In this document: positions 19,915 to 64,000 of the stretch, one piece after another
Position numbering within the stretch: position 1 is the stretch's first letter
How the letters are laid out: every line of letters starts with the position of its first letter
Assembly: GCA_002269645.1 (NCBI GenBank)
Contig: NIVC01001461.1
Location: forward strand, 1-64,000
DNA from: Macrostomum lignano
Lineage: Eukaryota
Direction of reading: 5' to 3'
DNA: 64,000 nt
Program-made: the position numbers and the translations under genes
The notes under the pieces: generated by a model
Databases searched by the model: none
Told to the model about the DNA's origin: nothing
The model's input: the letters and a program-made list of their open reading frames with translations, nothing else

Positions 19915-20779
19915 CCAGTTAGCTTACATTTGTAACTTTCTTTCAAATACGGTAAACTGCACTACATGTACTTAGGACCCTGTTAAGTGCCATTTTTTAG
20001 GAACTTTGTTGCGAAAAACAAACCCCAATACTATACTAAATTGAATACCTACTTGGATATTTACTTCTACATGCAATACCTCACCATACGCTCGTATATA
20101 CTCTCAATGTCTATATTTCAATGTCTACTTACTTTATATTCTCTAAAACGCAAATTAAACTGTACTATTGGAAGAGGTATCCAAAGTAGATATTCAATTT
20201 AGTATACTACTGGCGTTTGTGAGTAGTATAAATTGCATTATTCGCGACAGATTTTCACAAAAATTAACAAGGTCCAAAGCTGTAATAACTGCAGAAGCTG
20301 AGCATCTGTAGTGGACCGTATATGGGCTACCCATTCATAATTTACGTTTGTATAGATGTACAGCTATACATTGTATAGGAAATGTTTTAATGATGTAATG
20401 GCCCAATTTCAATTTACACTGCATATTGGCTTACGTTGGCTATTGTGCAGAGAGTTGAACTTTTTTCCATTTTCCAGTTTGAATACATGCTTTTCACATG
20501 TACATGTACATATGTACTTTTGGCTTTTACTTGTAGTGCAGGATAATGTCCTGTCAACACTTCCCAACCTTAATGTAAACTACATTGTAGCTCGTATGTA
20601 CGCATTTAAACTGGCAAACGCATTATTAGATGTACCTATATAGTACGTGCGGCAGTTGTTTGCTTAAAGTTGATGTGCCTGCGAGCACGAAAAGCAATTT
20701 TCAAAGTGCAATTTTCAAAGTTAAGGTATCCAAACAGTGTGTACGTCCAGTACGGGGGCAATGATTATTGTTGTATAAC

Positions 20780-20951
20780 CAGGGGCGGATCCAGTGGGTG
20801 GCCAAGAGGGCCATGCCCCCCTCAACCGCGGCCAAAAAAATTGGGCCATACTTTTTTGGCCTGCAAATATGCCAGGTCTATTTTCTAATATTGGGCTGTA
20901 GTACTTGGTACAGCTTGCCCTTCCCTCAAAAAGTTTCTGGATCCGTGCCTG
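20780..20951. mobile_element. hAT-type MITE (172 bp)
   Basis: TIR CAGGGGCGGATCCAG / CTGGATCCGTGCCTG (13/15). 8-bp TSD TGTATAAC / AGTATAAC (7/8). Confidence 0.8.
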
Positions 20952-22187
20952 AGTATAACAGGACGTAAACTCAAGGATCATGTACTTTTTGGAGGCCAGT
21001 TTCCCTGAAAAAATTTAATGGTGAATATCTGAATACCAGTTTTAAAATGATTACGGTGCATGAAATTCTGAAAGAGAGAAATCAGTACCATCATTCGGCA
21101 GTTGTGGCTGCTTTTTCTATTGCCATTCGCTCTTCTCTGACTTCTTAGTTACAAGTTACAAGATTGACATCCTAAATCAAGGCAATAAGATATTTACGGA
21201 TTGATCGTAGGCCGAAGAAAATGGGTCACGCACCAGAGTCAATTTAAAATCCACGAAATAATTTTTATATGTTAGTGCACACCGCCCCCTCAACAAAGAA
21301 CACATAAGACACAGAGCTGGCGAGCAGACGAGGTGAGGGAGCCTGGCAACGGAGCCCCCAACACCAAACAAAAGCAGGCGCGAAAGGAAAAGCAAAGCAA
21401 AAGGAACGCGCCAAAGGCAAAGGGGCAAAGAGGTGTTGTGATTTAAAAACTCAATGTACTTACCCATACTGTAGCTCTCTCTCTCTCCCTCTGACATTCT
21501 GACAACTCTCCCCACCCCTTCCATGCTATTCCATTCTATTTCAATAAGAATGATTTTTGGTAGCAACCATTTTAATGATATTGATAGATAAGTTTAGAAA
21601 TAACCATTTTGGAAACAGGAGTAGGTAGTAAATAAGTTATTATGTGTAATTATTTAGACTATTAAAAATAAACAATATTAAGATACACTAAAATAGATCA
21701 ACCCAAGGTCCTTAACCAAGATTTACTAATAAAGAATAATTACTAAGATAGAAAATAGAACAAAGTACTAATAATAGGCCTAACATAGATTAAAAGATAA
21801 TAATTAATTGATAAAAGTAACTATATTTATAGTTTGCTTCTACAAACTTCCTTTATCTATTTCTTTTTTCTTTAGTGTTTCCATTAATCTAGGCCCTATC
21901 TTCGTTGATAGTCTATCTCTGTTTATCTTGGTCTATCTTAGTAAAATATCTTGATTTAATAAAGTTTAATAGCTATTATTATATTTTTATTTTATTATAT
22001 TGACTTTGATAGAAAGTGGTTATGAATAAAAGAATATTTGGTATCTAAGTAGGCCATTCAAAATAAAAGCTATTACAAATTGATAAATATTTATTAAGGT
22101 ATTTATTGCAAACTGCTTGTTGATTCCATTGGTTATTTACTAGACAGTAATATTTTAGCTTTTTCATTGAATGTATATTGCTAAAAC

Positions 22188-22683
22188 CCTATAGTGTGGA
22201 TCATGCTAATTCCCTAAAACCCTAACAACCCAAAGCTAATTCCCAAAAGCACGCCGACAACAAGCGGATGCACGCCGATAAATTAAAATTCAAATTGAAG
22301 ACAAAAAACGTATTTTAAATTGCATTGTGTAAAACAAAGCAACAAATAATGTACAAAAGAAATGATATATCTTTAAAAATGTGTATTTCTCATACATTAA
22401 TTTATTTAACAGTCTTATACACTGTTTATTTACAATAGTTTTTTTCAAAAGTTAAATACAATAATACATATTTTATGTCTGCTTACCATTGCATTGGCAG
22501 CTTTGCCATATCAGGTGCCAGGCACGCGGCACGCGGCGCATGCCAGGCACGCCAGTGTATTTATGTAGTGTGCATTATGCATGCCAAATGCACGCCACTT
22601 ACCTAATCGCACCCCGGTGCACGCCACTTTTGAAAATGCACACGGGAAAATTCTCGCGTGCACTACATGATCTACACTATGGG
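22188..22683. mobile_element. MITE (~496 bp) with 18-bp TIRs and GCACGCC subterminal repeats
   Basis: TIR CCTATAGTGTGGATCATG / CATGATCTACACTATGGG (16/18). 7-bp TSD CTAAAAC on both sides. Confidence 0.7.
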
Positions 22684-23011
22684 CTAAAACTATTATATGA
22701 TAGATTTTTTTAATATTTACTATGCTTTTGACAATATAGTCAATTTGATTATTTCATAGATTAAAAAAGTTAGTTAATACCAAGTAAGATATACTTTTAA
22801 GTTTAAGTTTGAAGCTTAAATATAATATATTATAATAAATTTTGGAAAATAAGGAAGTGTCAAGTATTTGATATTAAATTAAGCCACTTTATTGTCAACA
22901 TTCTTTAATATATACTAGAATAGAAAAATAGACTAATATCTTAATAATAATATGCTCATATCTAGACATAGAATCAAGATATTTTATCATTAATATAATA
23001 TCATATACTAG

Positions 23012-23241
23012 CAATAGCAGATCTAGAATTTCATTTAAAGGAGGGGGGTTGTTCCAAGTTTTGGGGCACTAAATTTTAAGCTAAAGGGCCTAAAATTTGT
23101 ATAAGGCCAAAAAGGCAAACTTAAAGATGCAAAAATGTGTTTAAAGGGTACAAACCTAGGTTTTCAAGGGTGCAATATGTTCTATTAAGCTAAAAAAAGG
23201 GAGAGTAGCAGCCCCCTCACTGCCCCCCTAAATCTGCCCTG
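23012..23241. mobile_element. Older hAT-type MITE (230 bp)
   Basis: Degenerate TIR CAATAGCAGATCTAG / CTAAATCTGCCCTG. 8-bp TSD TATACTAG / TGTACTAG (7/8). Confidence 0.6.
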
Positions 23242-23780
23242 TGTACTAGATATTAGTATGTAGTTTACAGTATATAGTATAGTATATAGTATATTTTACT
23301 ATCTAGTATTTAAAAAAAATTCACTAATTTTTATCATTATTACACCATTGATCCATAAATAATAAATAAAGTTTGTTTTTTGCAGTTATTATTTTTTGTG
23401 CTTTCAATTATGAGCAAAAGCATTTAGAACTTGTAGCATCAATTAAATAAGAAATTATCCTATAGTCTATGGTATTTACCCATTCTTACAATAGCAATTT
23501 CAGCCAGTTTCAGCCATATATGTTTCAAGAAATTTGCTCATATTTTTTTATGGTAAAGAGCAATTTTAGTTTAATTAAAGGTAGGTTTGTTAATCCAAAG
23601 TTAATATTCTGTTAGTGACATTTTTAAAATCGATTCAAGCAAACTCAAAAGTCAAGGGGCTATTAAAATAGAATTTGTATATAATGAAATAATATTTCTG
23701 GTTGCCAGACTGCATGTAGCCTTTTGCTTAGTTGGCAATAGAAATTTGCTCAGGATACTCAGAGCTCTTTACTCACTAGT

Positions 23781-23805
23781 GCTAACTCACATTGCAATTT
23801 CCCAG
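23781..23805 (+). promoter_or_regulatory. Unpaired acceptor-like site upstream of the MED12 ATG (candidate trans-splice acceptor)
   Basis: GCTAAC branch-like motif then ...ATTGCAATTTCCCAG, 37 nt before the ATG; no upstream coding exon needed. Confidence 0.35.
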
Positions 23806-23842
23806 TGCTAATTGGCCACTGAGGCATTTCACCAGCCCGTGA

Positions 23843-26800
23843 ATGAGCATGCCATCGTTTCCCTCCTTGGAGACGCTCTCGCTGAAGAAGGCCCGGCTGG
23901 AGAGAAAGCCTCTTGGCCCGCCCGAGGTTTATCCGCAGATGCCCAATCAGGATGAGGATAAACTGGATCAGGTTGGTTCAAGATCCATCTTGTTGGCAGG
24001 GGATGAATCCTAGTTGATAATTCTTTGCTGCAATAAATACAGGCTAGAAGCTGCAGCTCTCACAGTGTCTCCCCGACAGCATTGTGCAAGCTGTTTCACA
24101 GCCCTTGAAGGCTGCAGCTTATGCTGTACATCTGTGACCACCGTTTGCGGGTATTTCATGGCTTAGCAGTCTTTGTATTCTATGATTCTAAAGCATCGCC
24201 CTTGAGCACTCCCAAAGCATCGCCCTTGAGCACTCCCAAAGCACCGCCCTTGAGCACTGCAAAAGCATCGCCCTTGAGCACTGCAAAAGCATCGCCCTTG
24301 AGCACTGCAAAAGCATCGCCCTTGAGCACTGCAAAAGCATTGCCCTTGAGCACTGCAAAAGCATCGCCCTTGAGCACTGCAAAAGCATCGCCCTTGAGCA
24401 CTGCAAAAGCATCGCCCTTGAGCACTCCCAAAGCATCGCCCTTGAGCACTCCCAAAGCATCGCCCTTGAGCACTCCCAAAGCACCGCCCTTGAGCACTGC
24501 AAAAGCATCGCCCTTGAGCACTGCAAAAGCATCGCCCTTGAGCACTCCCAAAGCATCGCCCTTGAGCACTCCCAAAGCACCGCCCTTGAGCACTGCAAAA
24601 GCATCGCCCTTGAGCACTGCAAAAGCATCGCCCTTGAGCACTGCAAAAGCATCGCCCTTGAGCACTGCAAAAGCATTGCCCTTGAGCACTGCAAAAGCAT
24701 CGCCCTTGAGCACTGCAAAAGCATCGCCCTTGAGCACTGCAAAAGCATCGCCCTTGAGCACTCCCAAAGCATCGCCCTTGAGCACTCCCAAAGCACCGCC
24801 CTTGAGCACTGCAAAAGCATCGCCCTTGAGCACTGCAAAAGCATCGCCCTTGAGCACTGCAAAAGCATCGCCCTTGAGCACTGCAAAAGCATCGCCCTTG
24901 AGCACTGCAAAAGCATTGCCCTTGAGCACTGCAAAAGCATCGCCCTTGAGCACTGCAAAAGCATCGCCCTTGAGCACTCCCAAAGCATCGCCCTTGAGCA
25001 CTCCCAAAGCACCGCCCTTGAGCACTGCAAAAGCATCGCCCTTGAGCACTGCAAAAGCATCGCCCTTGAGCACTGCAAAAGCATCGCCCTTGAGCACTCC
25101 CAAAGCATCGTCCTTGAGCACTCCCATAGCATCGCCCTTGAGCACTGCAAAAGCATCGTCCTTGAGCACTCCCATAGCATCGCCATTGAGCACTCCCATA
25201 GCATCGCCCTTGAGCACTCCCATAGCATCGCCCTTGAGCACTCCCAAAGCATCGCTCTGAAGCACTGCCAACGCATCGCCCTTGAGCACTCCCAAAGCAT
25301 CGCCCTTGAGCACTCCTACAACACACTCACTCTTGAGCAGTCTTGTACCTTATTTACTGCATCACTAATCCGTGTAGGTCAATGTCCGTGAAGGCTTCAA
25401 AGACATCCTGCAGAATCGATTCAAAGGCACCAAACTGGAAGAATACTCTTCCATAGCCAAAAATTTCAATTGCTCCAGCGAAGACGTGCTGGGCGCATTC
25501 AAGAAGATTGTACAGCGCAAAGTGGACGTTAACGTGATGCCGGACACCAGCAAGAGGCGCGGCGCCATCAGCAAGGACATCTCCCTGCCCATGGCCGGCC
25601 GGACCGCCAGCAAAGTTGAAGAGTGGTTTAAGGATTTCAAATCTGGCGAACAATTGACTAAATTGTCGGCTAAAGTGCCCCTGTCAGTGAAGAAGGAGGA
25701 CATACTCAAGGAGGTGTTCAAGAATCGTCTGCCCGTGCACCGGGCCATCTGGTATTTGAAGGTCTGGTGGCAGTTCAGCAGCAGCTTGTCCGAATCGTCT
25801 AAGAAGAAAAAACCATTTGATGCGCCTGAGGTTCAGGTAAACCTGCTGGCTGCTGACCCAAGCAGACCTATTGACCTATTCAGTGTGTCAGTGATTGCTG
25901 ACCCAAGCAGACCTATTGACCTATTCAGTGTGTCAGTGATTGCTGACCCAAGCAGACCTATTGACCTATTCAGTGTGTCAGTGATTGCTGACCCAAGCAG
26001 ACCTACTGACCTATTTATTGTGTCAGTGACGGCTGACCCAAGCAGACCTATTGACCTATTCAGTGTGTCAGTGATTGCTGAGTGCTGACCCAAGCAGACC
26101 TATTGACCTATTTACTGTGTCAGTGATTGCTGACCCAAGCAGACCTATTGACCTATTTATTGTGTCAGTGACGGCTGACCCAAGCAGACCTATTGACCTA
26201 TTCAGTGTGTCAGTGATTGCTGACCCAAGACGACCTATTGACCTATTTAGTGTGTCAGTGATTGCTGACCCAAGTATATCTATTGATCTATTTAGTGTGT
26301 CAGTGTCAGTGACGGCTGACCAAAGCAGACCTATTGACCTATTCAGTGTGTCAGTGATTGCTGACCCAAGCAGACCTATTGACCTATTCAGTGTGTCAGT
26401 GATTGCTGACCCAAGCAGACCTATTGACCTATTCAGTGTGTCAGTGATTGCTGACCCAAGCAGACCTATTGACCTATTTAGTGTGTCAGTGATTGCTGAT
26501 CCAAGCAGACCTACTGACCTATTCAGTGTGTCAGTGATTGCTGACCCAAGCAGACCTATTGACCTATTCAGTGTGTCAGTGATTGCTGACCGAAGCAGAC
26601 CTATTGACCTATTAAGTGTGTCGGTGATTGCTGACCCAAGCAGACCTATTGACCTATTTAGTGTGTCAGTGTCAGTGACGGTTGACCAAAGCAGACCTAT
26701 TGACCTATTTAGTGTGTCAGTGACGGCTGACCCAAGCAGACCTATTGACCTATTCAGTGTGTCAGTGATTGCTGACCCAAGCAGACCTATTGACCTATTC

Positions 26801-40957: not shown

Positions 40958-41056
40958 AGTTGTGGTGGATGGTTGTGGTGATCGAGATGGAAATTAAATG
41001 GGATGATGGGATAAAGTTTGCTTGATTTTGCTTTCCTACTTCAGCAGCCTTTGACC

Positions 41057-42733
41057 ATGTGCGCGGAGCTGCTACCGGAGGAGCTGGCAACCTACTACAA
41101 GCGGCTGTACCCCACCCACCTGATGGTGCAGTGGCTGTCCTACAGATCCCCAGCCTACTTTGCCAACAGGGAATTCTCCATGACCCTGCACGATGATATC
41201 TACCTGAGATTTCTCAGCTACAATTACGAGTCCGAGTTTCGCGGAGCCCTGCTGGACCGTCGGCCCGAGAAGATTGACATCGGCGCCGTGTACAGCTGCC
41301 GGCCGCGGGACAGAGCGACTGTCAGCGGCGGGGCCTTCCAGGCTAAGGAGAAAGAGCTGGTGATCGATATTGACCTCACCGACTATGACGGAGTTCGGCT
41401 GTGCTGCTCAGATGCTCGCGTGTGCTCAAAGTGCTGGCTGTTCATGCGGATCGCTGTGCAGGTATGGCTCTGCTGCTTCAGGGTTGAGTTTGGGTGCTTC
41501 AGGGCTGACTTTGCGTGCTTCAGGGCTGGTTTATCGTGCTTCAGGGCTGGCTTTGGGTGCTTCAGGGCTGGCTTTGGGTGCTTCAGGGCTGGCTTTGATT
41601 GCTTCAGGGCTAGCTTTTGGTGCTTCAGGGCCGATTTATGATGCTTCAGGGCTCGTTTATGGTGCTTCAGGGCCCGCTCGTTTATAGTGCTTCAGGGCTG
41701 GCTTTGGGGTGCTTCAGGGCTGGCTTTGGTGTGCTTCAGGGCTTGCTCCGGTTCTTTGCCTGGCATTGGGTGTTCTCGGATCCCAAGGCTAGTTTGAGAT
41801 TCCCTTCTTGGCTGGTGTTGGGCCTCAGGCCTGGCACAAGACTGGAGCAGGTGTGGGCAACTAATATAAAGCCGATTTCCGCACCGCCAGGTCCTGGACC
41901 GGGCCCTGCGCTGCGACTTCGGGTTCCGCCACCTGCTGTGGGTTTACTCCGGCCGTCGCGGCATTCACTGTTGGATTTGCGACCGCACCGCCCGGCAACT
42001 GTCAGCCAATGCTCGCACCGCCGTGATCGAGTACCTGTCCCTGGTGCGCCGGCCCGGAGACAAGCAGCCCCAGCAGGGCCAGCAGCAGCCGCCGAAGTGC
42101 CATCCCAGTGTCGCCGCGGCAGCCGACGCTATTCGTCGCCAATTCGACGATCTGGTCCGTCAGCAGGATCTGTTCGGCACCAAGGATCGAACCCGCGCCC
42201 TGTTGGCGCAGCTGCCCGAGGATCTCCGCTCGGTGGCGGACACCGCCGTGGCCTCCTGGCTGGCCGATCCCGACGCCTATCCGTCCTTGAAGCGCTGGAA
42301 GACGATCAGCAAGTTCGCCGTGAGCCGAGGCCGGCAGGATGTGGAGCAGCAGCTGCTGATCCAGTACGCCTACCCCAGGCTGGACGTGGGCGTCAGCACC
42401 GGCGTCAATCACCTGTTGAAGGCGCCGTTCTGCGTCCACCCCAAGACTGGCCGAATCTGCGTGCCGTTCGATCCGGCGGCTGTTGACAGCTTCGAGCCAG
42501 ACTCGGTGCCCACCCTGGCCCAGCTGCTTGCCGAGCTCAGTTCCGCCTCTGCTCAGCAGCAGCAACAGAAGCCGCATCTCATGGCTTACAAGTCCACTTC
42601 TTTGAAGGCTTCCATTGAATTGTTTGCCAAGTTTGTTGACAGCCTACGCGCTGACGAAGCTCAGGCTGCCGACGGCGCTGCTGCTGCTGGGGCCGCGCTG
42701 CGGGATGCCAGCAATGGGGGCGAGATTCTGTAG
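41057..42733 (+). CDS. PRIM1: DNA primase small (catalytic) subunit
   Basis: Exons 41057-41461 and 41891-42733 (phase 0). Motifs YYKRLYP, REFSMTL..DIYLRFLSY, PEKIDIGAVY, KELVIDIDLTDYD, DFGFRHLLWVYSGRRGIHCW, YPRLDVGVSTGVNHLLKAPFCVHPKTGRICVP. Confidence 0.97.
41474..41740. repeat. 21-bp minisatellite, PRIM1 intron
   Basis: Unit GTGCTTCAGGGCTGGCTTTGG. Confidence 0.9.
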
Positions 42734-53136: not shown

Positions 53137-53703
53137 GAGTCATTTGACCGATATTTGAATCATTTTGACCCAATTTGAGTCATATTTAACCTATATTATA
53201 GCGTTAATTAACGTTTTGAACTGAATTGGAATAAATATACGGATAATATATCAAAAACTAACCCTTAATTTTGGTAATATCTGATTACTTGTGTGGATGC
53301 GTTAGCAATCCTTGACTCGTTAAACTCTTGTCTACTTATTGTGAACTGATGGCTGCTTTTAAAGTTTTGACTTGTCATGGTTTTTTCAATGATTTGGCAT
53401 TTCTGTTGCCTCAATTCTCAACTGCCTTCAATAATAGCAAGATTTTCAAAGCTTTTTTTAATAGAAAAAAGTTTCGCCCTGTAAATTTCTGCTGCTCCAT
53501 TGCTGGAGCAACGCGCTGGATTTGGATAGAAAAAATGCGAACGAAAGGCTTTGGTCTGTTTTGATTTCATTTGTTATTTAGGTGAAATATTCTGCAGATA
53601 TTCTTGCATTTCTACTAGCAGTAGCAACATCAGTAGTTTGTTTCAAGTAAATTCATCAAATCCTATTTACACTGCAGCAGTTCGAGCAGAAAATTTAGTT
53701 GCT

Positions 53704-55107
53704 ATGGGCAACGAGTCCAGCAGCGGCGGCGGAGCTTCATCAGACAGGCGCCAGCATCCCGGAGGCTCGTCATCGGCGGCCGGCAAAGCCGCGCCCAGCC
53801 ACCAGTATTCGGTCAACAGGCCGATTGGCAGCGACTCCAGCCCGCCCCAGTCAAACTTTAATCTCCATGGCAACTCGGCTGCTGCCAACACCGCGGCAGC
53901 TCCGGCGAGCGGCAGTTCGTCTACTGCGGACGATGGCAAACATCGCATTGTGGTGGTGAACTCCGGCCCCAGGCCCGACAGCGCCGCCGTTAGCGACGAG
54001 TTGCGCGCGCTTGGCACTCTGCCAACTTTTATGCCGCTGATAAAATCGTCGGCCACGTCGACCGGACACGCCTTGGACAGCTCGGCGTCGGCGGCTCCGG
54101 CCGCTGAGCGAGTGGACCACCGCAGCCTGCTGCACTTCTGCGCCCGCTACCAGGAGCACCTGAAGCAGTGCGCCGAGGCCGTGGCGTTCGATCAGAACTC
54201 GCTGTGCGGCCGCATCAAGGAGCTGGAGGCCGGGTCTAAGTCCATTCACGACAGCCTGCAGGAGCGGCACAAGAAGTTCCAGCGGCTGGCCGAGCAAATT
54301 CACAAGGTCACTGAGCTGAGGAGCATGCTTACCAGGATGCGGAGTCACGCAAAGTGAGGGGCATGCCTGGCTACTGTGGCTAGTCTGAGTTTGAAACTGG
54401 ATTCTGGCATTTATGTTTGATTCTGTAATCTATCGGTCAGATTCTGTAATCTGTTGGTCGGATTCTGTAATCTATCAGTTAGTCAGATTCTGTAATCAGT
54501 TAGTCAGATTCTGTAATCTGTTGGTCGGATTCTGTAATCTATTGGTCAGATTCTGTCATCTATTGATCAGATTCTGTAATTTGTTGGTCAGATTCTGTAA
54601 TCTATTGATCAGATTCTGTAATCTATTAGTCGGATTCTGTAATCTATTGATCAGATTCTGTAATCTATTAGTCGGATTCTGTAATCTATTGGTCAGATTC
54701 TGTAATATATTGGTTAGATTCTGTAATCTATTGGTCAGATTCTGTAACATATTAGTCGGATTCTGTAGTCTATTGTTCGGATTCTGTAATACGCTTATAT
54801 TATTTACGCATAAGTGATCCGTATATTAAAAGTTTAATTATCTTCAGGGTAGATTCAGTCTGTGCCCTGCAGTCAGTTGCAGCTTCACCCCGCGGCCCCC
54901 CTTTTCAGGCACCTCGGCGCCCTGATGGAGGAGCTGAACTCCGCTCTGCCAGCCGACTGCCAGCTGGAGCCGTTTTCCTGGCAGTCCACCCTGCCGCAGC
55001 AGCAGCAGTCTGACAGCTCTGCTGTTTCCTCTGCAGCAGCAGCAAGTCGCGCTGCCGGAGCCTCGAATGCCTCCACGCCAAGCCCTGCGAATTCTCTATT
55101 AGATTGA
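53704..55107 (+). CDS. BORCS5: BLOC-1-related complex subunit 5 (myrlysin / LOH12CR1)
   Basis: Exons 53704-54353 and 54909-55107 (phase 2). MGNESS myristoylation-type start; motifs IVVV, LPTFMPLIK, RYQEHLKQCAEAVAFDQNSLCGRIKE, EQIHKVTEL, LNSALP...LEPFS. Confidence 0.93.
54415..54790. repeat. 21-bp minisatellite, BORCS5 intron
   Basis: Unit GATTCTGTAATCTATTGGTCA. Confidence 0.93.
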
Positions 55108-56252: not shown

Positions 56253-57740
56253 ATAAGCTACTGTAGTCAAGCCTCACAACGAACTCCCTTTTATAGAAAT
56301 TTTCACTCTTGTTTTGCTTATTCTGGCTCATAAAAATTCAATAATCAGGACAGTGATTGCGGAATCAACGATTTTAAATTACCCAATTAACGCTGGATCC
56401 AAGAGACAAGCAGATTGGCAATAATGCATGATATTGATCGATCATTCGCTTTAATTTAAAATATTGTTAATTAAGATTCCAAGTCACTTAATACCTGTGC
56501 TAACTGATTTATTACTGTTTGCAACTTGTCACTATACATTTGTCAATATTGTGAATATATTGCTTAAATATATCTTAGTACTGGTTTTATACAGACTGCT
56601 TATTAATTATAAAAGATTTGACTGAATTAATGTCGATTTCCGCTGGCCCAGTTCGATCGGCGCTAAGTTAAGCAAAGTTGGTAGCGGTTAGTAAGCAACA
56701 TACCACTAACAAGTGGCAAATACAGCTGAAGTGGCAAGAATCGCTAAAGAGTGACTCTAGCGACTCTCTGGGGGCAACACTTGCGACTTTTTAACGACTC
56801 AAACTACTGCAATGCGACGGAGAGGCGGGAAAAAATTTGATCTTTGTTGGCGCTTAACTTTCTAATTCATCAAGTGACGCAGATGCGCTTTAGAGGCAAC
56901 TCAGTGCTTCTACAGCGACTCTGGCACGCCTCAGCTAGAAATGACCACAGATACTAGAATAACTAGATAAGCCACTCAGCACATTTGCGAGTAAGCTACT
57001 TTCAGTTCAGTAGTAGGTTAGACAAGCATTTTAACGTATTTGTAAAGCCAAGGCTACTTTATTGGCTCCTACCCCCCCCCCCCCAGCTTAAACCCTCCAA
57101 CCGCGCCCTTCCACCCTACCCCCTCCGCCCCACCCCAATTTTTATTGCTTTTCTCGGAATTCTACCCTAAAGCTGCGATGTACATATTTCAGTGGACTGG
57201 TTAATGTACATTACTGCTGAACAAATTAGCAAGTTGTTTACGCCTGCAAGCTTGGGCTTGTAAACTTATCAACGTTATTTCAGCTGCCTCTATTTTTATA
57301 AAATAGCTTATGTATTCTTTTTTGCTACTGAACTGAAAGTAGGAAGCTGTTTTACTAAGTATATATGGCTGAGTGGCCCATCTAGTTATTTTTTAATATC
57401 CGTGGATATGACTCTACGGCCCCAGAGTCACTAGCGTCACGGCGTTTCATAGTTCAGGCAATAAAAGACTCTTTGACGACTTTTACCGTGACGTCTCGTG
57501 GTTTTAGAGTCGTCTAGAGTCACTTCTTTCCTATTTTGTACCTGCGTTACTTGCAATGAGTCTGGGGCGCTTCTCGGCCTAAGTCTATTGTTGGCACTTC
57601 ACAAGCTGTACACAGCAGGCCACACCTGGTCACCTTTAGCGGGTCAGGCACCTCAGGATTCTAGCTATCAGATTGAAAAATACTTCGCAGAGACTGCAAT
57701 GATTTGTGGCCGCCTTGCAGCTGTGCCCGGCACTGAAGGC

Positions 57741-60700
57741 ATGCCGCTGAACGTGAACATTGGCGTGCTGGGTCACGTGGACAGCGGCAAGACCTCGCTG
57801 TCCAAGGCGCTAAGCACCCAGGCCAGCACGGCCAGCTTCGACAAGAATCCGCAGAGTCAGGAGCGCGGCATCACCCTGGACCTGGGCTTCTCAACTTTCA
57901 GCGTGTCTTTTGCTGACGAAGACTCTTCCGCCACTGGCAGCTCCTGGCGGCGGCTGCCGGCCGAACTGTCCGAGCGCTGGGGCCGACCGGCCGAATTGCA
58001 GTTCACACTGGTTGACTGTCCCGGACACGCATCGCTTATTCGCGCGGTCATCGGCGGTGCCCAGATTATCGACGCGGTGATGCTGGTTGTGGACGCTACT
58101 AAGGGCATCCAGACCCAGACTGCAGAGTGCCTGGTGCTGGCCGAGATCGTCTGCTCCTGCCTGCTGCTTGTCATCAATAAGGTGCAGAGTGCGAACTCAC
58201 TGTTATTTGTTTAGTCTTTGTGTAAGCACTTTCTCAGCAGGATTTAAGATTATCTAGGGGAATTTTTCAGCAGGATTTAAGATTCTCTAGCGGAATTTCT
58301 CAGTAGGATTTAAGATTCTGTAAGGGAATTTTTCTGTTAGGATTTGAAATTCTCTAGAGGAATTTTTCAGTGGGTTTCAAGATTGCCTAGGGGAATTTCC
58401 CAGACAATTCCACTGCCAAGCGGTTCATCGCAGGTGGATCTCCTCCCGGAAGCGGAGCGCGACCGCTCCCTGGACCGGCTGAGCAAGCGCCTGCTGAAGA
58501 CCCTGGCCGGCACGAAGTTCGCCAACTGTCCCGTGGCAGCCGTGGCCGCCAGCCCGTCGGGAGGCGACGCACCCGACGCCGCCGCTCCCGAGCCTATCGG
58601 CCTGGCGAATCTCGTCAAGCAGCTGGTTGCCACCGCGCCGGTGCCCACTCGAAGCCCCGCCGGTCCGTTTCTATTCGCCGTGGACCACTGCTACGGCATC
58701 CGCGGCCAGGGCACCGTGCTGACCGGCACCGTCCTGGCCGGCTGCGTTCGCGTTGGCGACACCGTGGAGGTCGCGCACGAGCAGCGTCGAGTCAAAGGGA
58801 TGCAGGTGAGGCTGGGATCGGCTGTCTGGCTGGAGGGGGCAGTCATAGGGTGGGGGCATTGAAAATATGTTTTTTCTGCATGGGTGTGTTCGGCGGCAGG
58901 TCAGCTCGTATGTATTTATCTTTGTGGAAAAGTAGTATTAACAGTAAGTAGTATCAGTAGTAGTATTACTAATAGTAGTAGTAGTACTAATAGTAGTAGT
59001 AGTAGTACTAATAGTAGTAGTAGCACTAATAGTAGTAGTAGTAATAATAGTAGTAGTGGTATTAGTAGTAGTAATAATAATAGCAGTAGTAGTAGTAGTA
59101 GTGGTAGTACTATAGTATTAGTAGTACTAATTGTAGTAGGTAATAGTATTAATAGTAGTAATAGTATTAATGGTACTATCAGTAGTACTAATAGTAGTAG
59201 TATTAGTGGTAGTAGTGATATTACTAATATTATTAGTATTACTAATTGTAGTAGTACTAATATAGTAGTAGCAGTAGTAGCATCATTTTGCACTAAAAGG
59301 TTTTGAGTTGCTCGTGGACCCAGAATGTCACAGCCCTAACAGTAGTATAGCTGTAATATGCTCGCATTATTACTAAGCCAAGCCCCCCCCCCAACTCAGG
59401 TATTCCGCAAGCCGGTCGATTTCGCTCAGCAGGGCGACCGGCTGGGCCTCTGCGTCACCCAGCTGGACCCGCGCCTGCTCGAGCGCGGCCTGGTGTGCGC
59501 GCCCGGCTCCGTGCCCACCATCCACGCCCTGCTGCTGCCGGTGTCTCCGGTGCCGCACTACAAACTGCCTGTGCGCTCCAAGTCCAAGCTGCACGTCAGC
59601 CTCGGTCACGAGACCGCCATGGCCAGCCTGCTGCTGTTCCAGGCGCCGCGGCCCGACCAGCCGCTGGCCGAGCAGTTCTGCGAATACCTGGACGAGGCCA
59701 GCATGCGGGACTGCCCGCCCGGCCTGCACGCCCTGCTGGAGTTTGAGCGGCCTGTTCTGGTGAGTCTTGATCGGGGAGTAGCGTCTGACACAGGCTCTGA
59801 CATACTGGGGAATTGTAATCTGACACAGGCTCTGACATATTGGGGAATTGTAATCTGACACAGGCTCTGACATATTGGGGAATTGTAGTCTGACACAGCC
59901 TCTGACATATTGGGGAATTGTAATCTGACACAGGCTCTGGCATATTGGGGAATTGTAATCTGATACAGGCTCTGACATACTGGGGAATTCTAATCTGACA
60001 CAGGCTCTGACATATTGGGGAATTGTAGTCTGACACAGCCTCTGACATATTGGGGAATTGTAATCTGACACAGGCTCTGACATATTGGGGAATTGTAATC
60101 TGACACAGGCTCTGACATATTGGGGAATTGTAATCTTACACAGGCTCTGACATATTGGGGAATTGTAGTCTGACACAGCCTCTGACATATTGGGGAATTG
60201 TAATCTGACACAGGCTCTGACATATTGGGGAATTGTAATCTGACACAGGCTCTGACATATTGGGGAATTGTAATCTTACACAGGCTCTGACATATTGGGG
60301 AATTGTAGTCTGACACAGCCTCTGACATACTGGGGAATTGTAATCTGACACAGGCTCTGACATATTGGGGAATTGTAATCTGACACAGGCTCTGACATAT
60401 TGGGGAATTGTAATCTGACACAGGATCTGGCATATTGGGGAATTGTAATCTGATACAGGCTCTGACATATTGGGGAATTCTAATCTGACACAGGCTCTGA
60501 CATATTGGGGAATTCTAATCTCATACATTCTCCGACATACTGGGGAATTGTAATCTGACAGGCTCTGACATATTGAGGAATTCTGATCTGACATTAGGGG
60601 AATATTCTATCCAACGAGACTTTGAGCTTATATCTCTATCCCACAGTAACAGAAACCACAGCGTACAATATCCCAGTTATGAATATGAAATCCCATTACG

Positions 60701-61670
60701 CAACAATAATTCTCCCAGGCCCCGCCCAGCGCCACGGTGATAGTCTCCAAGCTGGACGTGGACATCAACCAGAACGTGTGCCGCATCGCCATGCACGGCC
60801 GGCCGCTGGAGCTGCTCACCTCAGCCGACTATCGCACTGCTCAGCTGCCCAAACTCGTTCGAGTCTACCGGCCAAAGTGTCGGCGAGGCCGGCTGGACCG
60901 GGTCAAGGACCCCTACACCGTGGTGGTGACTGGATTGTTTCGAAAGGAGACCGCGCTTGATGTCTTTATTGGACTGCAGGTGCGCGATTCGGGGGGGGGA
61001 AGGCTTCGATGTCACTGATCTCTTTGTCTCGGGGTATCTGTGAGACTTTAATTCAGTTCTGTGATTCTGATTCACTTCTATGAGATTCTGATTCACTTCT
61101 ATGAGATTCTGATTCACTTCTATGAGATTCTGATTCACTTCTATGAGATTCTGATTCACTTCTATGAGATTCTGATTCACTTCTATGATATTCTGATTCA
61201 CTTCTATGAGATTCTGATTCACTTCTATGAGATTTTGATTCACCTCTCTGAGATTTTGATTCACCTCTCTGAGATTTTGAAATCTTCTTACAAGACTGTG
61301 ATCTATCTATACAAGATTGTCTATCGATATTATGACAGGCTTCGAGCAATCTCTTTGATATATGAGATTTTGATGGAATCTCAGCTGTGACACTTTCATC
61401 CATCCGTGACGCCTGCCCCACCCCCCGGAACCCCAGGTGTCCCTGTCCACAGGACAGCAGGGCCGCATCGAGGGCTCATTCGGGCAGAGCGGCAAGTGCA
61501 CAGTCCGCATGTCGGAGCCCCTGTCGGACGAATTCTGCCAGCGCTACGGCGGCGGCAAGCGCGCCAAAAAAGGCGCCAGCGGCGGCGACGGCGCCTCGGA
61601 GCCGGTCGAGGTTTGCCTGAACTTCAAGCGGCTGCTGTTCGACCCGCAGAGGAAGATGACTCAGACCTGA
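57741..61670 (+). CDS. EEFSEC: Selenocysteine-specific elongation factor (eEFSec / SelB)
   Basis: Exons 57741-58181, 58434-58805, 59400-59759, 60719-60979, 61437-61670, all phase 0. Motifs NVNIGVLGHVDSGKTSLSKALS, RGITLDLGFS, LVDCPGHASLIR, NK|VD, FAVDHCYGIRGQGTVLTGTV, QGDRLGLCVTQ, LGHET, CRIAMHG, GSFGQSGK. Confidence 0.96.
58240..58400. repeat. Degenerate 33-bp repeat, EEFSEC intron 1
   Basis: GGATTTAAGATT(A/C)TCTAG(G/C)GGAATTT..CAG(C/T)A, ~5 copies. Confidence 0.75.
58930..59280. repeat. (AGT)n low-complexity tract, EEFSEC intron 2
   Basis: Read directly. Confidence 0.9.
59785..60595. repeat. 35-bp minisatellite, EEFSEC intron 3
   Basis: Unit CTGACACAGGCTCTGACATATTGGGGAATTGTAAT. Confidence 0.95.
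61063..61280. repeat. 21-bp minisatellite, EEFSEC intron 4
   Basis: Unit CTATGAGATTCTGATTCACTT. Confidence 0.93.
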
Positions 61671-61870
61671 TTTGAGTTGCCGCTCAGTCGGACTCCGTGA
61701 CATTGGATTGATTTAAACTGTTACGTCTATACTGTAATTTTATTATTTCAGCCGCATTTTGCATCTTGCTACTGTTAGTAGGTGAAATTGAATGATTTTC
61801 GTATATAGTACTATTTGCATGAAGCATATTTAGCCGGATCTGTTTCAATTGTTATGCGAGTTGCGCCTCA

Positions 61871-61876
61871 AATAAA
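61871..61876 (+). terminator. Candidate poly(A) signal for EEFSEC
   Basis: AATAAA 200 nt after the stop, followed by GT/T-rich sequence; 170 nt upstream of the XPF acceptor. Confidence 0.55.
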
Positions 61877-62046
61877 TGGCCAATTAACTGTATTCGAGAT
61901 GTCTGTGTACCGACTGTCCTTGTGGCGGGTGCATCTTTTATAAGTTAAAAAATGGCTATGAATGAATCTCTCTTTGACATTCTAACTGTTCATTTCTCAT
62001 TCATTAATACACCGGATCTGCATTTACATAAACTGGCCAATTCCAG

Positions 62047-63545
62047 TCTACAGACGGCCTGCTGGACTACGAGAGCGCGCTGTTCCTGGACCTCTTTCAC
62101 CAGGACGGCTTAGCGGTCCTCGGCGCCGGCCTCTGCCCGCACCGGCTGGCCGCCCAGCTCATCCGCCTCTACTCCGACCCGGCCCACCTGGTGCTGGTGG
62201 TCAACGCGAGGCCCGACGAGGCCGCGTTTTACGCCGAGTACGTCGAGCGCGCCTGCGTCGCTTCCGGCGCCCCGCCTGTCTCGCCGGCGCCTCGCGCCCT
62301 CACCTCTGAGCAGCCGCAGGCTGAGAGGCGCCGGCTCTACAACGAAGGCGGCGTGTTTTTTGCCTCGTCCGCCCAGATTCTCGTGGTCGACTTTTTGCGC
62401 TCGGTGGTGCCGGCCGATGCTGTGAGCGGCATCATCGTGATGCACGCTGATGAGGTGCTGGACCTGTGCCAGGTGAGCCTTGACTAAGTTCCTCCTTGAC
62501 CCGGGCCTTGACCCAGTTGGCCCAGGTCCTTAACCCATCTGATCAGGTCCTTGACCCATCTGATCAGGTCCTTGACCCATCTGCTCAGATCCTTGACCCA
62601 TCTGATCAGGTCCTTGACCCATCTGATCAGGTCCTTGACCCATCTGATCAGGTCCTTGACCCATCTGATCAGGTTATTGATCCATCTGATCAGATCCTTG
62701 ACCCATCTGATCAGATCCTTGACCCATCTGATCAGGTTATTGACCCATCTGATCAGATCCTTGACCCATCTGATCAGGTTATTGACCCATCTGATCAGGT
62801 CCTTGACCCATCTGATCAAGTTATTGATCCATCTGATCAGGTTATTGACCCATCTGATCAGGTCCTTGACCCATCTGATCAGGTTATTGATCCATCTGAT
62901 CAGGTCCTTGACCCATCTGATCAGGTCCTTAACCCATCTACTGATCAGGTCCTTAACCCATCTGATCAGGTCCTTGACCCATCTGATCAGATCCTTGACC
63001 CATCTGATCAGGTCCTTGACCCATCTGATCAGGTCCTTGACCCATCTGATCAGGTTATTGACCCATCTGATCAGGTCCTTGACCCATCTGGTCAGGTCAT
63101 TAACCCATCTAATCAGGTCATTGACCCATCTGATCAGATCATTGACCCAGATTCTTGACTCATCTGACCCACTGTTCCTTGACCCAGCCATCTGACCAGG
63201 TCCTCCTTGACCCGGCTGACCCAGACACATTGTGTGGTGCGTTTTCTATCTCCAGAGGATTCTCAATTTTCAATCCAAATTTCCCCAGGAGGCCTTCGTT
63301 CTCCGTCTGTACCGGGAGGCGAACCCCACCGGCTTCATCAAGGCCATCACTGACCGGGCCCAGGGCCTCACCCGGGGCGGCTTCGGCATCGAGAGAATCC
63401 TGCGCACCCTGTTCGTGCCAGGCCTGTTCCTGCTGCCCCGGTTCCATGAGAGCGTGGCCGCCTGCATGGACGCCTGCCCGCCACAGGTGACAGACAGACA
63501 GACAGACAGACGGACAGTAGACAGACAGACAGACAGACGGACAGC

Positions 63546-63610
<65 letters not shown>

Positions 63611-63673
63611 CTAAGACAGACAGACAGACAGACAGACAGACACTAAGACAGACAGACAGACAGACAGACACTA

Positions 63674-63710
<37 letters not shown>

Positions 63711-63713
63711 CTA

Positions 63714-63781
<68 letters not shown>

Positions 63782-64000
63782 TGGACAGACAGAACTTAAG
63801 AGGTCCAGCTAGAAGAAGGGGAAAATTAAATAAAATTAAATAAATTAACACGCACAAAAACACATAAAAGACGCCTGAGAAAGACACTCAGACAAACTGT
63901 CGTCTCGATCTTCACAGGTGGAGGAGGTTCGCGTCAACCTGACGGAGCCGATGCTGCGCTGCCAGTCGGCCCTGGTGGACCTGCTGAAGGCCTGCATGCA
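62047..64000 (+). CDS. ERCC4: DNA repair endonuclease XPF, 5' part (runs off the window; no genomic ATG seen)
   Basis: Exons 62047-62472, 63289-63486, 63918->64000, all phase 0. Motifs LLDYESALFLDLFHQDGL, LVLVVNA, ERRRLYNEGGVFFASSAQILVVDFL, Q|EAFVLRLYR..N.TGFIKAITD, LPRFHESV, VEEVRVNLT.PM..CQSALVDLLKAC. Confidence 0.93.
62490..63220. repeat. 21-bp minisatellite, XPF intron 1
   Basis: Unit CCTTGACCCATCTGATCAGGT. Confidence 0.95.
63490..63790. repeat. (CAGA)n microsatellite, XPF intron 2
   Basis: Begins directly after the GT donor. Confidence 0.95.

What the first reader, a model, noticed from the sequence alone, without database searches (positions are those of the whole stretch)
61871..62472. 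XPF lacks a genomic start codon; it may be initiated by the 3'-terminal AUG of a spliced leader
Seen: the conserved XPF N-terminus (DGLLDYESALFLDLFHQDGL) has an in-frame TAA at 62029-62031 upstream. The first in-frame ATG (62440) is ~130 codons into the conserved domain. An acceptor TTCCAG (62041-62046) lies in phase 0 right before TCT ACA GAC GGC CTG, with CTAAC and T-rich sequence upstream, only 170 nt after the EEFSEC AATAAA. Established: flatworm spliced leaders end in AUG, which can serve as the initiator Met. Inference: SL-AUG plus TCT ACA... gives MSTDGLLDYE, so translation of an essential repair nuclease would depend on trans-splicing.
Basis: partly seen in the sequence, partly recalled or inferred. 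Interest (0 to 1): 0.78.

Follow-up and report, generated by a model that had tools for sequence, protein, structure and literature searches.

The report
XPF start codon supplied by spliced leader
In this Macrostomum lignano flatworm locus the DNA-repair gene XPF has no start codon of its own and most likely borrows the AUG at the end of the trans-spliced leader RNA, a trick shown in schistosomes in 2006, so this is a likely new example rather than a new mechanism.

Summary
XPF exon 1 (62047-62472) has an in-frame TAA five codons upstream. Its first in-frame ATG is 131 codons in. It begins directly after TTCCAG, 170 nt after the AATAAA of the upstream same-strand gene, which I confirmed as EEFSEC.

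The window is Macrostomum lignano. Its single 35-nt spliced leader (SL) ends in ATG. Its published trans-splice acceptor motif is [T/C]TNCAG, and its operon spacers peak near 100 bp.

The AG at 62045-46 ends a 102-nt AG-free stretch and is the first AG after a CTAAC. GC content jumps from 0.3-0.4 to 0.6-0.8 exactly at 62047. No ATG in the spacer is followed by an in-phase consensus donor. SL-ATG joined at 62047 reads MSTDGLLDYE..., a normal XPF N-terminus.

I therefore rate the SL-AUG reading about 0.75 likely. It is not proven, because no M. lignano RNA data could be reached.

One caveat: a second motif match, CTACAG at 62048-53, would put the SL-AUG out of frame.

The mechanism is established (Cheng et al. 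2006) and is routinely cited for flatworms. One Schistosoma and one Echinococcus XPF locus each keep a genomic ATG. Verdict: probable new member of a known kind, low interest.

The parts
61437..61670 (+). Last coding exon of the upstream gene EEFSEC, with stop codon TGA at 61668-61670.
   Evidence: Acceptor ccccag|GTG at 61436/61437. The ORF is listed. The concatenated EEFSEC exons match human eEFSec 5izk at E=9e-134.
61871..61876 (+). AATAAA polyadenylation signal of EEFSEC.
   Evidence: It is the only canonical AATAAA between the EEFSEC stop and the XPF exon.
61877..62046 (+). Intercistronic spacer (outron), 170 nt and AT-rich (GC 0.30-0.53, mostly 0.3-0.4). It contains CTAAC at 61982-61986 and a 100-nt AG-free zone at 61945-62044.
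   Evidence: Published M. lignano operon spacers peak near 100 bp, with a 1 kb threshold (PMC8629364).
62029..62031 (+). In-frame TAA, five codons upstream of the acceptor. It closes the XPF frame on the genomic side.
62041..62046 (+). TTCCAG, the proposed SL trans-splice acceptor. It is in phase 0 with the XPF ORF.
   Evidence: It fits the [T/C]TNCAG motif of M. lignano trans-splice acceptors. It is the first AG after the AG-free zone.
62048..62053 (+). CTACAG, a competing acceptor-motif match 7 nt downstream. Here the SL-ATG would be out of frame and would open a 20-codon ORF whose TAG stop is at 62111-62113.
62047..62472 (+). XPF exon 1, 142 codons reading STDGLLDYE...DLCQ. It has no start codon of its own; the first in-frame ATG is at 62440.
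   Evidence: Frame 0 has GC3 0.87 and no stops. It aligns to human XPF residues 15 onward.
62473..63288 (+). XPF intron 1, starting with donor GTGAGC. It contains a 21-nt tandem repeat array at 62523-63149.
   Evidence: The junction DLCQ|EAFVLRLY aligns without a gap to human ESCQEAFILRLF.
63289..63486 (+). XPF exon 2, 66 codons.
63487..63917 (+). XPF intron 2, with a (GACA)n microsatellite at 63489-63793.
63918..64000 (+). Start of XPF exon 3, which runs off the end of the window.

Best explanation
XPF is the downstream gene of a two-gene, SL-resolved transcription unit, EEFSEC then XPF, in Macrostomum lignano.

Proposed steps, all inferred rather than shown:
1. The primary transcript is cleaved and polyadenylated shortly after the AATAAA at 61871-76.
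2. The 35-nt spliced leader is trans-spliced onto the acceptor TTCCAG|TCT at 62046/62047.
3. The leader ends in ...UUGCAUG and the acceptor is in phase 0, so the leader's terminal AUG becomes codon 1: AUG UCU ACA GAC GGC CUG CUG GAC UAC GAG = MSTDGLLDYE...
4. Full-length XPF therefore cannot be made from an AUG on an unprocessed transcript.

Shown here: the sequence anatomy, the gene identities, the species, the frame relations and the absence of alternatives in the sequence. Taken from the literature: the SL sequence, the acceptor motif, operon spacing, and the precedent for the SL AUG acting as initiator.
For: 1. There is no genomic start. An in-frame TAA lies at 62029-31, and the first in-frame ATG (62440) would delete about 130 residues of the conserved helicase-like domain.
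2. The species is M. lignano. Its SL ends in ATG and 30-39% of its genes are trans-spliced (PMC8629364 and PMC5730564).
3. TTCCAG fits the published trans-acceptor motif [T/C]TNCAG.
4. It is the first AG after a 102-nt AG-free run, rank 23 of 4170 in the window, which begins upstream of a CTAAC.
5. The acceptor lies 170 nt after the AATAAA of a same-strand gene, matching the roughly 100-bp operon spacer mode.
6. GC content jumps from 0.3-0.4 to 0.6-0.8 exactly at 62047, and frame-0 GC3 is 0.87. Coding therefore starts at the acceptor with no genomic 5'UTR.
7. The predicted N-terminus has 4 residues between M and LLDYE. That is typical: 26 of 59 XPF homologues that start with M and show the motif have 6 or fewer residues before it. 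Most full-length parasitic-flatworm models read M-x-x-LL[ED]YE.
8. Other genes in the window have a genomic ATG 12-26 nt after a [TC]TNCAG: PRIM1, LOH12CR1-like and EEFSEC. XPF looks like the same layout with the ATG moved into the SL.
9. S. mansoni XPF (Smp_153770) is listed among SL trans-spliced genes (Boroni 2018 Dataset 5).
10. The SL 3' AUG is a demonstrated initiator in S. mansoni. It is in frame in 28% of trans-spliced mRNAs, and more than 40 cDNAs need it (Cheng et al. 2006 as summarised in PMC9851317).
Against: - No RNA, ribosome or peptide evidence for this gene could be reached. Exact-product look-ups for M. lignano sequences returned nothing. ERCC4/XPF is absent from the held supplements of two M. 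lignano transcriptome papers.
- A second motif match, CTACAG at 62048-53, lies 7 nt downstream and would put the SL AUG out of frame.
- The pyrimidine content upstream of 62046 is modest (0.53 over 30 nt), and the CTAAC is 61 nt from the AG, rather far for a branch point.
- The SL AUG has a poor Kozak context, with U at -3 and U at +4. I read this from the SL and exon sequences, and it is my own inference.
- One Schistosoma and one Echinococcus XPF locus each have a genomic ATG, so dependence on the SL AUG is not a conserved feature of flatworm XPF.
Confidence: 0.75

Rival explanations
1. A cis-spliced upstream exon supplies the ATG and is joined to the same phase-0 acceptor at 62046. This could be a micro-exon in the 170-nt spacer or an exon further upstream.
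For: The spacer contains ATGs at 61876, 61899, 61952, 61958 and 61962. Flatworm acceptors are often shared between cis- and trans-splicing (PMC12582326).
Against: No ATG between the EEFSEC stop and the acceptor is followed by an in-phase donor matching the M. lignano consensus GT[G/A]AG. The only in-phase GTs are GTATAT, GTTGCG, GTATTC, GTGTAC, GTGCAT and GTTCAT. The spacer has non-coding composition, with GC 0.3-0.4. A promoter plus an exon would have to fit into about 150 nt behind another gene's poly(A) site. XPF homologues need no further N-terminal residues.
Confidence: 0.07
2. The SL AUG is not the initiator. Either the SL goes mainly to the out-of-frame acceptor at 62053, or the mRNA is not trans-spliced. 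XPF would then start at a near-cognate CUG (62059 or 62062) or at the internal AUG at 62440.
For: CTACAG at 62048-53 also fits [T/C]TNCAG. The SL AUG has a weak Kozak context (inference from the sequence). There is no ATG in any frame between 62047 and 62417, so scanning ribosomes could reach 62440 nearly unhindered.
Against: The spliceosome normally takes the first AG after the branch region, which is 62045-46 (established knowledge). Starting at 62440 would remove about 130 conserved residues that are clearly under coding constraint, with GC3 0.87 and a gap-free alignment to human XPF residues 15-140. An untrans-spliced RNA carries a 53-codon out-of-frame ORF (61952-62113) overlapping the XPF start. 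CUG initiation is usually inefficient.
Confidence: 0.1
3. This copy is defective, or the assembly is wrong here. A functional paralogue or allele would carry a genomic ATG; M. lignano is a hidden polyploid with many duplicated genes.
For: M. lignano has extensive duplication (PMC5730564 and PMC10468722). At least two XPF copies are implied by P0002 (98% identical) and P0005 (69% identical). An ORF from the ATG at 61952 runs through the acceptor in another frame, so a single indel would create an ATG-initiated fusion.
Against: Exons 1-3 are intact, with strong codon bias, no stops and canonical splice sites. Two gene models in UniRef, P0002 and P0005, which apparently derive from a different assembly, read the same STDGLLDYE start with no Met before it. 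Both were fused onto EEFSEC instead, which is what an ab initio predictor does when no ATG exists. By my hand count from the sequence, the 61952-62046 stretch has GC3 of about 0.34, which is non-coding composition.
Confidence: 0.05

Closest known systems
Flatworm SL 3'-terminal AUG used as initiator methionine (Schistosoma mansoni; Cheng, Cohen, Ndegwa and Davis, J Biol Chem 2006;281:733)
   Same: The SL ends in AUG. The acceptor is in phase with a conserved ORF that has no AUG of its own. The SL supplies both the whole 5'UTR and codon 1.
   Different: The species is a free-living basal flatworm and the gene is different. Here the case rests on genomic inference only, whereas the schistosome cases rest on cDNAs and translation assays. 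That detail comes from the summary in PMC9851317 and from my memory of the paper, which is not held in the library.
SL-resolved operons of M. lignano (Ustyantsev and Berezikov 2021, PMC8629364; Wudarski et al. 2017, PMC5730564)
   Same: Same-strand gene pair. The spacer of about 150-170 nt lies near the published mode of about 100 bp. A [T/C]TNCAG acceptor precedes the downstream gene, and both genes are conserved housekeeping genes.
   Different: Whether EEFSEC and XPF are actually co-transcribed was not tested. Those papers, as far as I read them, do not describe which genes depend on the SL AUG.
XPF loci of one Schistosoma and one Echinococcus species (S. guineensis L001, E. granulosus L002)
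   Same: The protein N-terminus is the same design, M plus a few residues plus LL[ED]YE. A candidate acceptor sits close upstream. S. mansoni XPF is reported as SL trans-spliced.
   Different: Both keep a genomic ATG. In Schistosoma the sequence is ...ttttag|TCATAAATGTATGAA, so an SL AUG joined there would read AUG UCA UAA, hitting a stop just before the genomic AUG. Echinococcus has ...tttttcATGtctgtg.
slORFs, ORFs created by start codons inside spliced leaders (slORFfinder, PMC9851317)
   Same: It is the same concept: the SL donates the start codon.
   Different: slORFs are mostly novel or alternative ORFs detected by ribosome profiling. Here the SL AUG would initiate the canonical, conserved protein.

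Membership tests
SL-AUG-initiated flatworm mRNA (sensu Cheng et al. 2006) | The organism has an SL RNA whose exon ends in AUG. | tested here: met
   The window is M. lignano (98% identical UniRef fragments). The SL, CGGTCTCTTACTGCGAAGACTCAATTTATTGCATG, comes from PMC8629364. The SL gene itself is not in the window.
SL-AUG-initiated flatworm mRNA (sensu Cheng et al. 2006) | The mRNA is trans-spliced, with the SL joined directly to the ORF. | not testable with these tools
   Only sequence proxies are available: the [T/C]TNCAG motif, the first AG after a 102-nt AG-free zone, and the GC jump at 62047. No M. lignano RNA data could be reached.
SL-AUG-initiated flatworm mRNA (sensu Cheng et al. 2006) | The SL AUG is in frame with the conserved ORF, with no intervening stop. 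| tested here: met
   SL joined to 62047 translates to MSTDGLLDYESALF....
SL-AUG-initiated flatworm mRNA (sensu Cheng et al. 2006) | No usable genomic AUG exists for the full-length protein. | tested here: met
   TAA at 62029-31, first in-frame ATG at 62440, and no in-phase consensus donor after any spacer ATG.
SL-AUG-initiated flatworm mRNA (sensu Cheng et al. 2006) | Translation actually starts at the SL AUG. | not testable with these tools
   This needs Ribo-seq, N-terminal proteomics or a reporter assay.
XPF/ERCC4 structure-specific endonuclease | N-terminal helicase-like (SF2-like) domain homologous to XPF. | tested here: met
   phmmer against PDB: 6sxa_F human XPF, E=2.7e-50, residues 15-237. 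642 homologues at E<=1e-10 in the representative library.
XPF/ERCC4 structure-specific endonuclease | C-terminal ERCC4 nuclease domain and the HhH2 domain. | not testable with these tools
   The window ends at 64000, inside exon 3, so the rest of the gene lies outside it.
Downstream gene of an SL-resolved operon (M. lignano definition, PMC8629364) | Same-strand upstream gene at a repeat-adjusted distance under 1 kb. | tested here: met
   The EEFSEC stop ends at 61670 and its AATAAA is at 61871-76. The XPF acceptor is at 62046.
Downstream gene of an SL-resolved operon (M. lignano definition, PMC8629364) | Both genes lie on one precursor RNA, and the downstream gene is trans-spliced. | not testable with these tools
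   This needs RNA-seq or long-read cDNA.

The most novel reading that the evidence does not exclude
Macrostomum XPF would have lost, or never had, the genomic ATG that one Schistosoma and one Echinococcus locus retain. Production of an essential repair nuclease would then depend on trans-splicing. The two tandem acceptors 7 nt apart, 62046 in frame and 62053 out of frame, would act as a splice-site-choice switch. That switch would set how much XPF protein is made from a constitutively transcribed EEFSEC-XPF operon, for example in neoblasts versus differentiated cells.
Probability: 0.1. Interest if true: 0.5.

Novelty: new member of a known kind. Interest (0 to 1): 0.25.

Why it matters
If confirmed, this is a clean and easily explained case of a conserved, essential protein whose start codon is not in its gene.

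- For annotation: predictors that require a genomic ATG fail here. The UniRef M. lignano models fuse the XPF N-terminus onto EEFSEC or truncate it.
- For experiments: transgenes, knock-ins or RNAi-rescue constructs for such genes in M. lignano must supply an ATG or keep the trans-splice acceptor.
- For evolution: the contrast with the Schistosoma and Echinococcus loci, which keep a genomic ATG, hints that start codons can migrate between gene and leader.

None of this changes the understanding of the mechanism, which is established.

Tried and rejected
Searches for direct RNA or paralogue evidence, all negative:
- Exact-product look-ups for the two UniRef M. lignano fragments and for the exon-1 ORF: none on record.
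- The first homology search found no Logan-derived M. lignano XPF, only five hits. Four were mis-predicted UniRef fragments.
- ERCC4, XPF and EEFSEC are not in the held supplements of Wudarski 2017 or Grudniewska 2016, nor in those of the 2025 MBE flatworm SL paper.
- Wasik et al. 2015 is not held.

Other negative searches:
- SL sequence in the window: none, allowing up to 3 mismatches.
- Rfam families in the window: none.
- Pfam on the N-terminal 235 residues: no significant family. Identity had to come from PDB and phmmer searches instead.

Readings considered and rejected:
- The micro-exon ATGTCT|GTGTAC and every other spacer ATG, because no in-phase GT[G/A]AG donor follows.
- The 61952 ORF as a real N-terminal extension, because it is in the wrong frame and has non-coding composition.
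- Initiation at 62440, because it would delete a conserved domain.

The closest protein in the large library, P0006 with its relative P0272, comes from two Logan contigs of unidentified organisms. They cannot be used as flatworm comparisons.

Full report
OBSERVATION

I read 61000-64000 and translated all three frames across the finding. In the XPF frame the sequence reads ...SAFT*TGQFQ|STDGLLDYESALFLDLFHQDGLAVLGAGL...
- TAA at 62029-31.
- TTCCAG at 62041-46.
- TCT ACA GAC GGC CTG from 62047.
- Donor CAG|GTGAGC at 62472/3.
- First in-frame ATG at 62440.
- AATAAA at 61871-76, ending 170 nt before the acceptor.
- CTAAC at 61982-86.

The only other ATGs in exon 1 are at 62417 and 62450, and both are out of frame.

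Exons 2 (63289-63486) and 3 (from 63918) follow canonical GT..AG introns. The concatenated 235 residues match human XPF (PDB 6sxa_F) at E=2.7e-50, with residues 5-235 aligned to human 15-237. The alignment crosses both exon junctions without gaps. The upstream same-strand gene is EEFSEC, at E=9e-134 against human eEFSec 5izk. Its last exon is 61437-61670.

ORGANISM

A search of 5.8 billion proteins returned four UniRef fragments named Macrostomum lignano. One, P0002, is 98% identical. P0002 and P0005 both contain ...STDGLLDYESALF... fused to the C-terminal part of EEFSEC. These are mis-predictions, and they are what an ab initio predictor produces when the downstream gene has no ATG.

M. lignano has a single 35-nt spliced leader, CGGTCTCTTACTGCGAAGACTCAATTTATTGCATG, found on 30-39% of its genes. 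Its published features are:
- Most enriched trans-acceptor motif: [T/C]TNCAG.
- Cis donor consensus: GT[G/A]AG.
- Spacers between trans-spliced operon genes peak near 100 bp, with an operon threshold of 1 kb.

These come from PMC8629364 and PMC5730564. The refutation condition "no SL system in the organism" is therefore excluded. No SL gene lies in the window, and there are no Rfam hits.

IS 62046 A REAL ACCEPTOR?

- TTCCAG fits the published motif.
- Downstream of the AATAAA, only two motif matches occur before the coding sequence is well under way: 62041-46 in phase 0, and CTACAG at 62048-53 in phase 1.
- The AG at 62045-46 ends a 102-nt AG-free run. That is rank 23 of 4170 in the window, and most of the longer runs I inspected lie in tandem-repeat arrays.
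- That AG is the first one after the CTAAC. An AG-exclusion zone is the classic signature of a used 3' splice site (established knowledge).
- GC content is 0.30-0.40 in the three 30-nt bins before 62047, and 0.60-0.80 in every bin after it. Frame-0 GC3 of exon 1 is 0.87, with no stops.

Coding sequence therefore begins at the acceptor itself, with no genomic 5'UTR. That is what an SL-AUG-initiated gene should look like.

Other genes in the window are identified by Pfam or PDB: MED12, PRIM1, WDR36/UTP21, LOH12CR1-like and EEFSEC. All are on the + strand. For the three whose starts I read, a genomic ATG sits 12-26 nt after a [TC]TNCAG:
- PRIM1: CTTCAG 41039-44, ATG 41057.
- LOH12CR1-like: CTGCAG 53672-77, ATG 53704.
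- EEFSEC: TTGCAG 57715-20, ATG 57741.

XPF looks like the same layout with zero spacer and the ATG provided by the leader.

ALTERNATIVES IN THE SEQUENCE

I listed every ATG between the EEFSEC stop and the acceptor, with its ORF and every in-phase GT. None of the candidate donors fits GT[G/A]AG. They are GTATAT, GTTGCG, GTATTC, GTGTAC, GTGCAT and GTTCAT.

The longest spacer ORF (61952-62113, 53 codons) is in another frame and has non-coding composition. On an unprocessed RNA it would act as an overlapping upstream ORF, and trans-splicing removes it.

Joining the SL at 62047 gives MSTDGLLDYESALF... Joining it at 62054 gives MTACWTTRARCSWTSFTRTA followed by a stop.

IS M+STDG+LLDYE A PLAUSIBLE N-TERMINUS?

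A full HMMER scan of 1.84 billion representatives gave 642 hits at E<=1e-10. Among hits that start with M and show the LLxYE motif, 26 of 59 have 6 or fewer residues before it. Examples are MLEFEN, MSKLLDYE and MGDVDDLLDYE.

Most full-length parasitic-flatworm XPF models recovered read M-x-x-LL[ED]YE:
- Schistosoma: MYELLEYE.
- Other trematodes: MHELL[ED]YE.
- Cestodes: MSVLL[ED]YE.
- A monogenean: MTALLEYE.

A few models carry longer predicted extensions. No conserved N-terminal exon is missing, so the start must lie within a few codons of 62047.

COMPARISON WITH OTHER FLATWORMS

I fetched the XPF loci of Schistosoma guineensis (L001) and Echinococcus granulosus (L002). Both have a genomic ATG.
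- In Schistosoma the sequence is ...ttttattttag|TCATAAATGTATGAACTGCTTGAG. An SL AUG joined at that AG would read AUG UCA UAA and stop just before the genomic AUG.
- In Echinococcus the sequence is ...ggtttttcATGtctgtgCTACTGGAT.

S. mansoni XPF (Smp_153770) appears in the list of SL trans-spliced genes of Boroni et al. 2018, with an SL-trapping mean of 1365 and 8 filtered RNA-seq reads. XPF is therefore reported as an SL target in a schistosome as well. Dependence on the SL AUG appears specific to the Macrostomum gene, on the evidence of these two other loci only.

WHAT IS KNOWN

The flatworm SL 3'-terminal AUG as initiator Met was shown in S. mansoni by Cheng, Cohen, Ndegwa and Davis (JBC 2006). 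[quoted passage not shown] The point is repeated in PMC12582326, PMC5832876 and PMC7653826. For Macrostomum, PMC10468722 labels the final ATG of the SL as a translation start codon. The mechanism is therefore not new. The specific gene, and the contrast with the two parasite loci, are small additions.

LIMITS

No RNA-level evidence could be obtained. The following therefore remain inferred:
- Trans-splicing at 62046.
- The relative use of 62046 versus 62053.
- Co-transcription with EEFSEC.
- Initiation at the SL AUG.

The pyrimidine tract is modest and the CTAAC lies 61 nt from the AG. The SL AUG has a weak Kozak context, which I read from the sequences.

VERDICT

The rivals are a cis exon (0.07), non-use of the SL AUG (0.10) and a defective copy or assembly error (0.05). 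Novelty: probable new member of a known kind. Interest is low, at 0.25.

Noticed in passing
window 25486-64000, + strand: Six conserved housekeeping genes lie head-to-tail on the + strand: MED12 (about 25.5-40 kb), PRIM1 (41057-42733), WDR36/UTP21 (about 44.9-50.3 kb), LOH12CR1/BORCS5-like (from 53704), EEFSEC (57741-61670) and XPF (from 62047).. Several may form SL-resolved operons. Only the EEFSEC-XPF spacer was measured.
   Followed up: partly
window 41039-41059; 53672-53706; 57715-57743: PRIM1, the LOH12CR1-like gene and EEFSEC each have a [TC]TNCAG motif 12-26 nt upstream of their genomic ATG. These are candidate SL acceptors with very short genomic 5'UTRs.
   Followed up: partly
window 61063-61280; 62523-63149; 63489-63793: Introns carry long tandem arrays. 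A 21-nt unit occurs x10 in the last EEFSEC intron, and another 21-nt unit x30 in XPF intron 1. A (GACA)x76 microsatellite nearly fills XPF intron 2. Many similar arrays elsewhere in the window create long spurious ORFs.
   Followed up: partly
UniRef M. lignano models P0002 (A0A1I8FQ47) and P0005 (A0A1I8FA24), corresponding to window about 61437-62200: Public gene models fuse the EEFSEC C-terminus to the XPF N-terminus. P0002 does this through a fake micro-exon, SRILHLAT, at 61752-61774 with donor GTTAGT. The models carry misleading names such as 'ILEI domain-containing' and 'VPS13 domain-containing'. These annotation errors are probably caused by the missing ATG and the tight spacing.
   Followed up: partly
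window 61952-62113: A 53-codon ATG-initiated ORF in another frame overlaps the XPF start. It would be translated from any RNA that is not trans-spliced, and trans-splicing at 62046 removes it.
   Followed up: yes
L003 2094-2110 (Logan DRR639838) and L004 about 775-792 (Logan ERR14224705): The closest full-length XPF in the 15-billion-protein collection (47% identity) and its relative come from unidentified organisms. Both have an uninterrupted XPF ORF and the layout TTTTCAG + 6 nt + ATG (ATAAAA or ATTGAA, no stop). An SL ending in AUG would be in frame with the genomic ATG there. Schistosoma has the same 6-nt spacing, but with a stop (TCATAA). Organism and SL status are unknown.
   Followed up: partly
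window 20001-24000: A markedly AT-rich block (GC 0.33-0.36) sits in a window that otherwise averages about 0.45-0.58 GC. I did not examine it.
   Followed up: no
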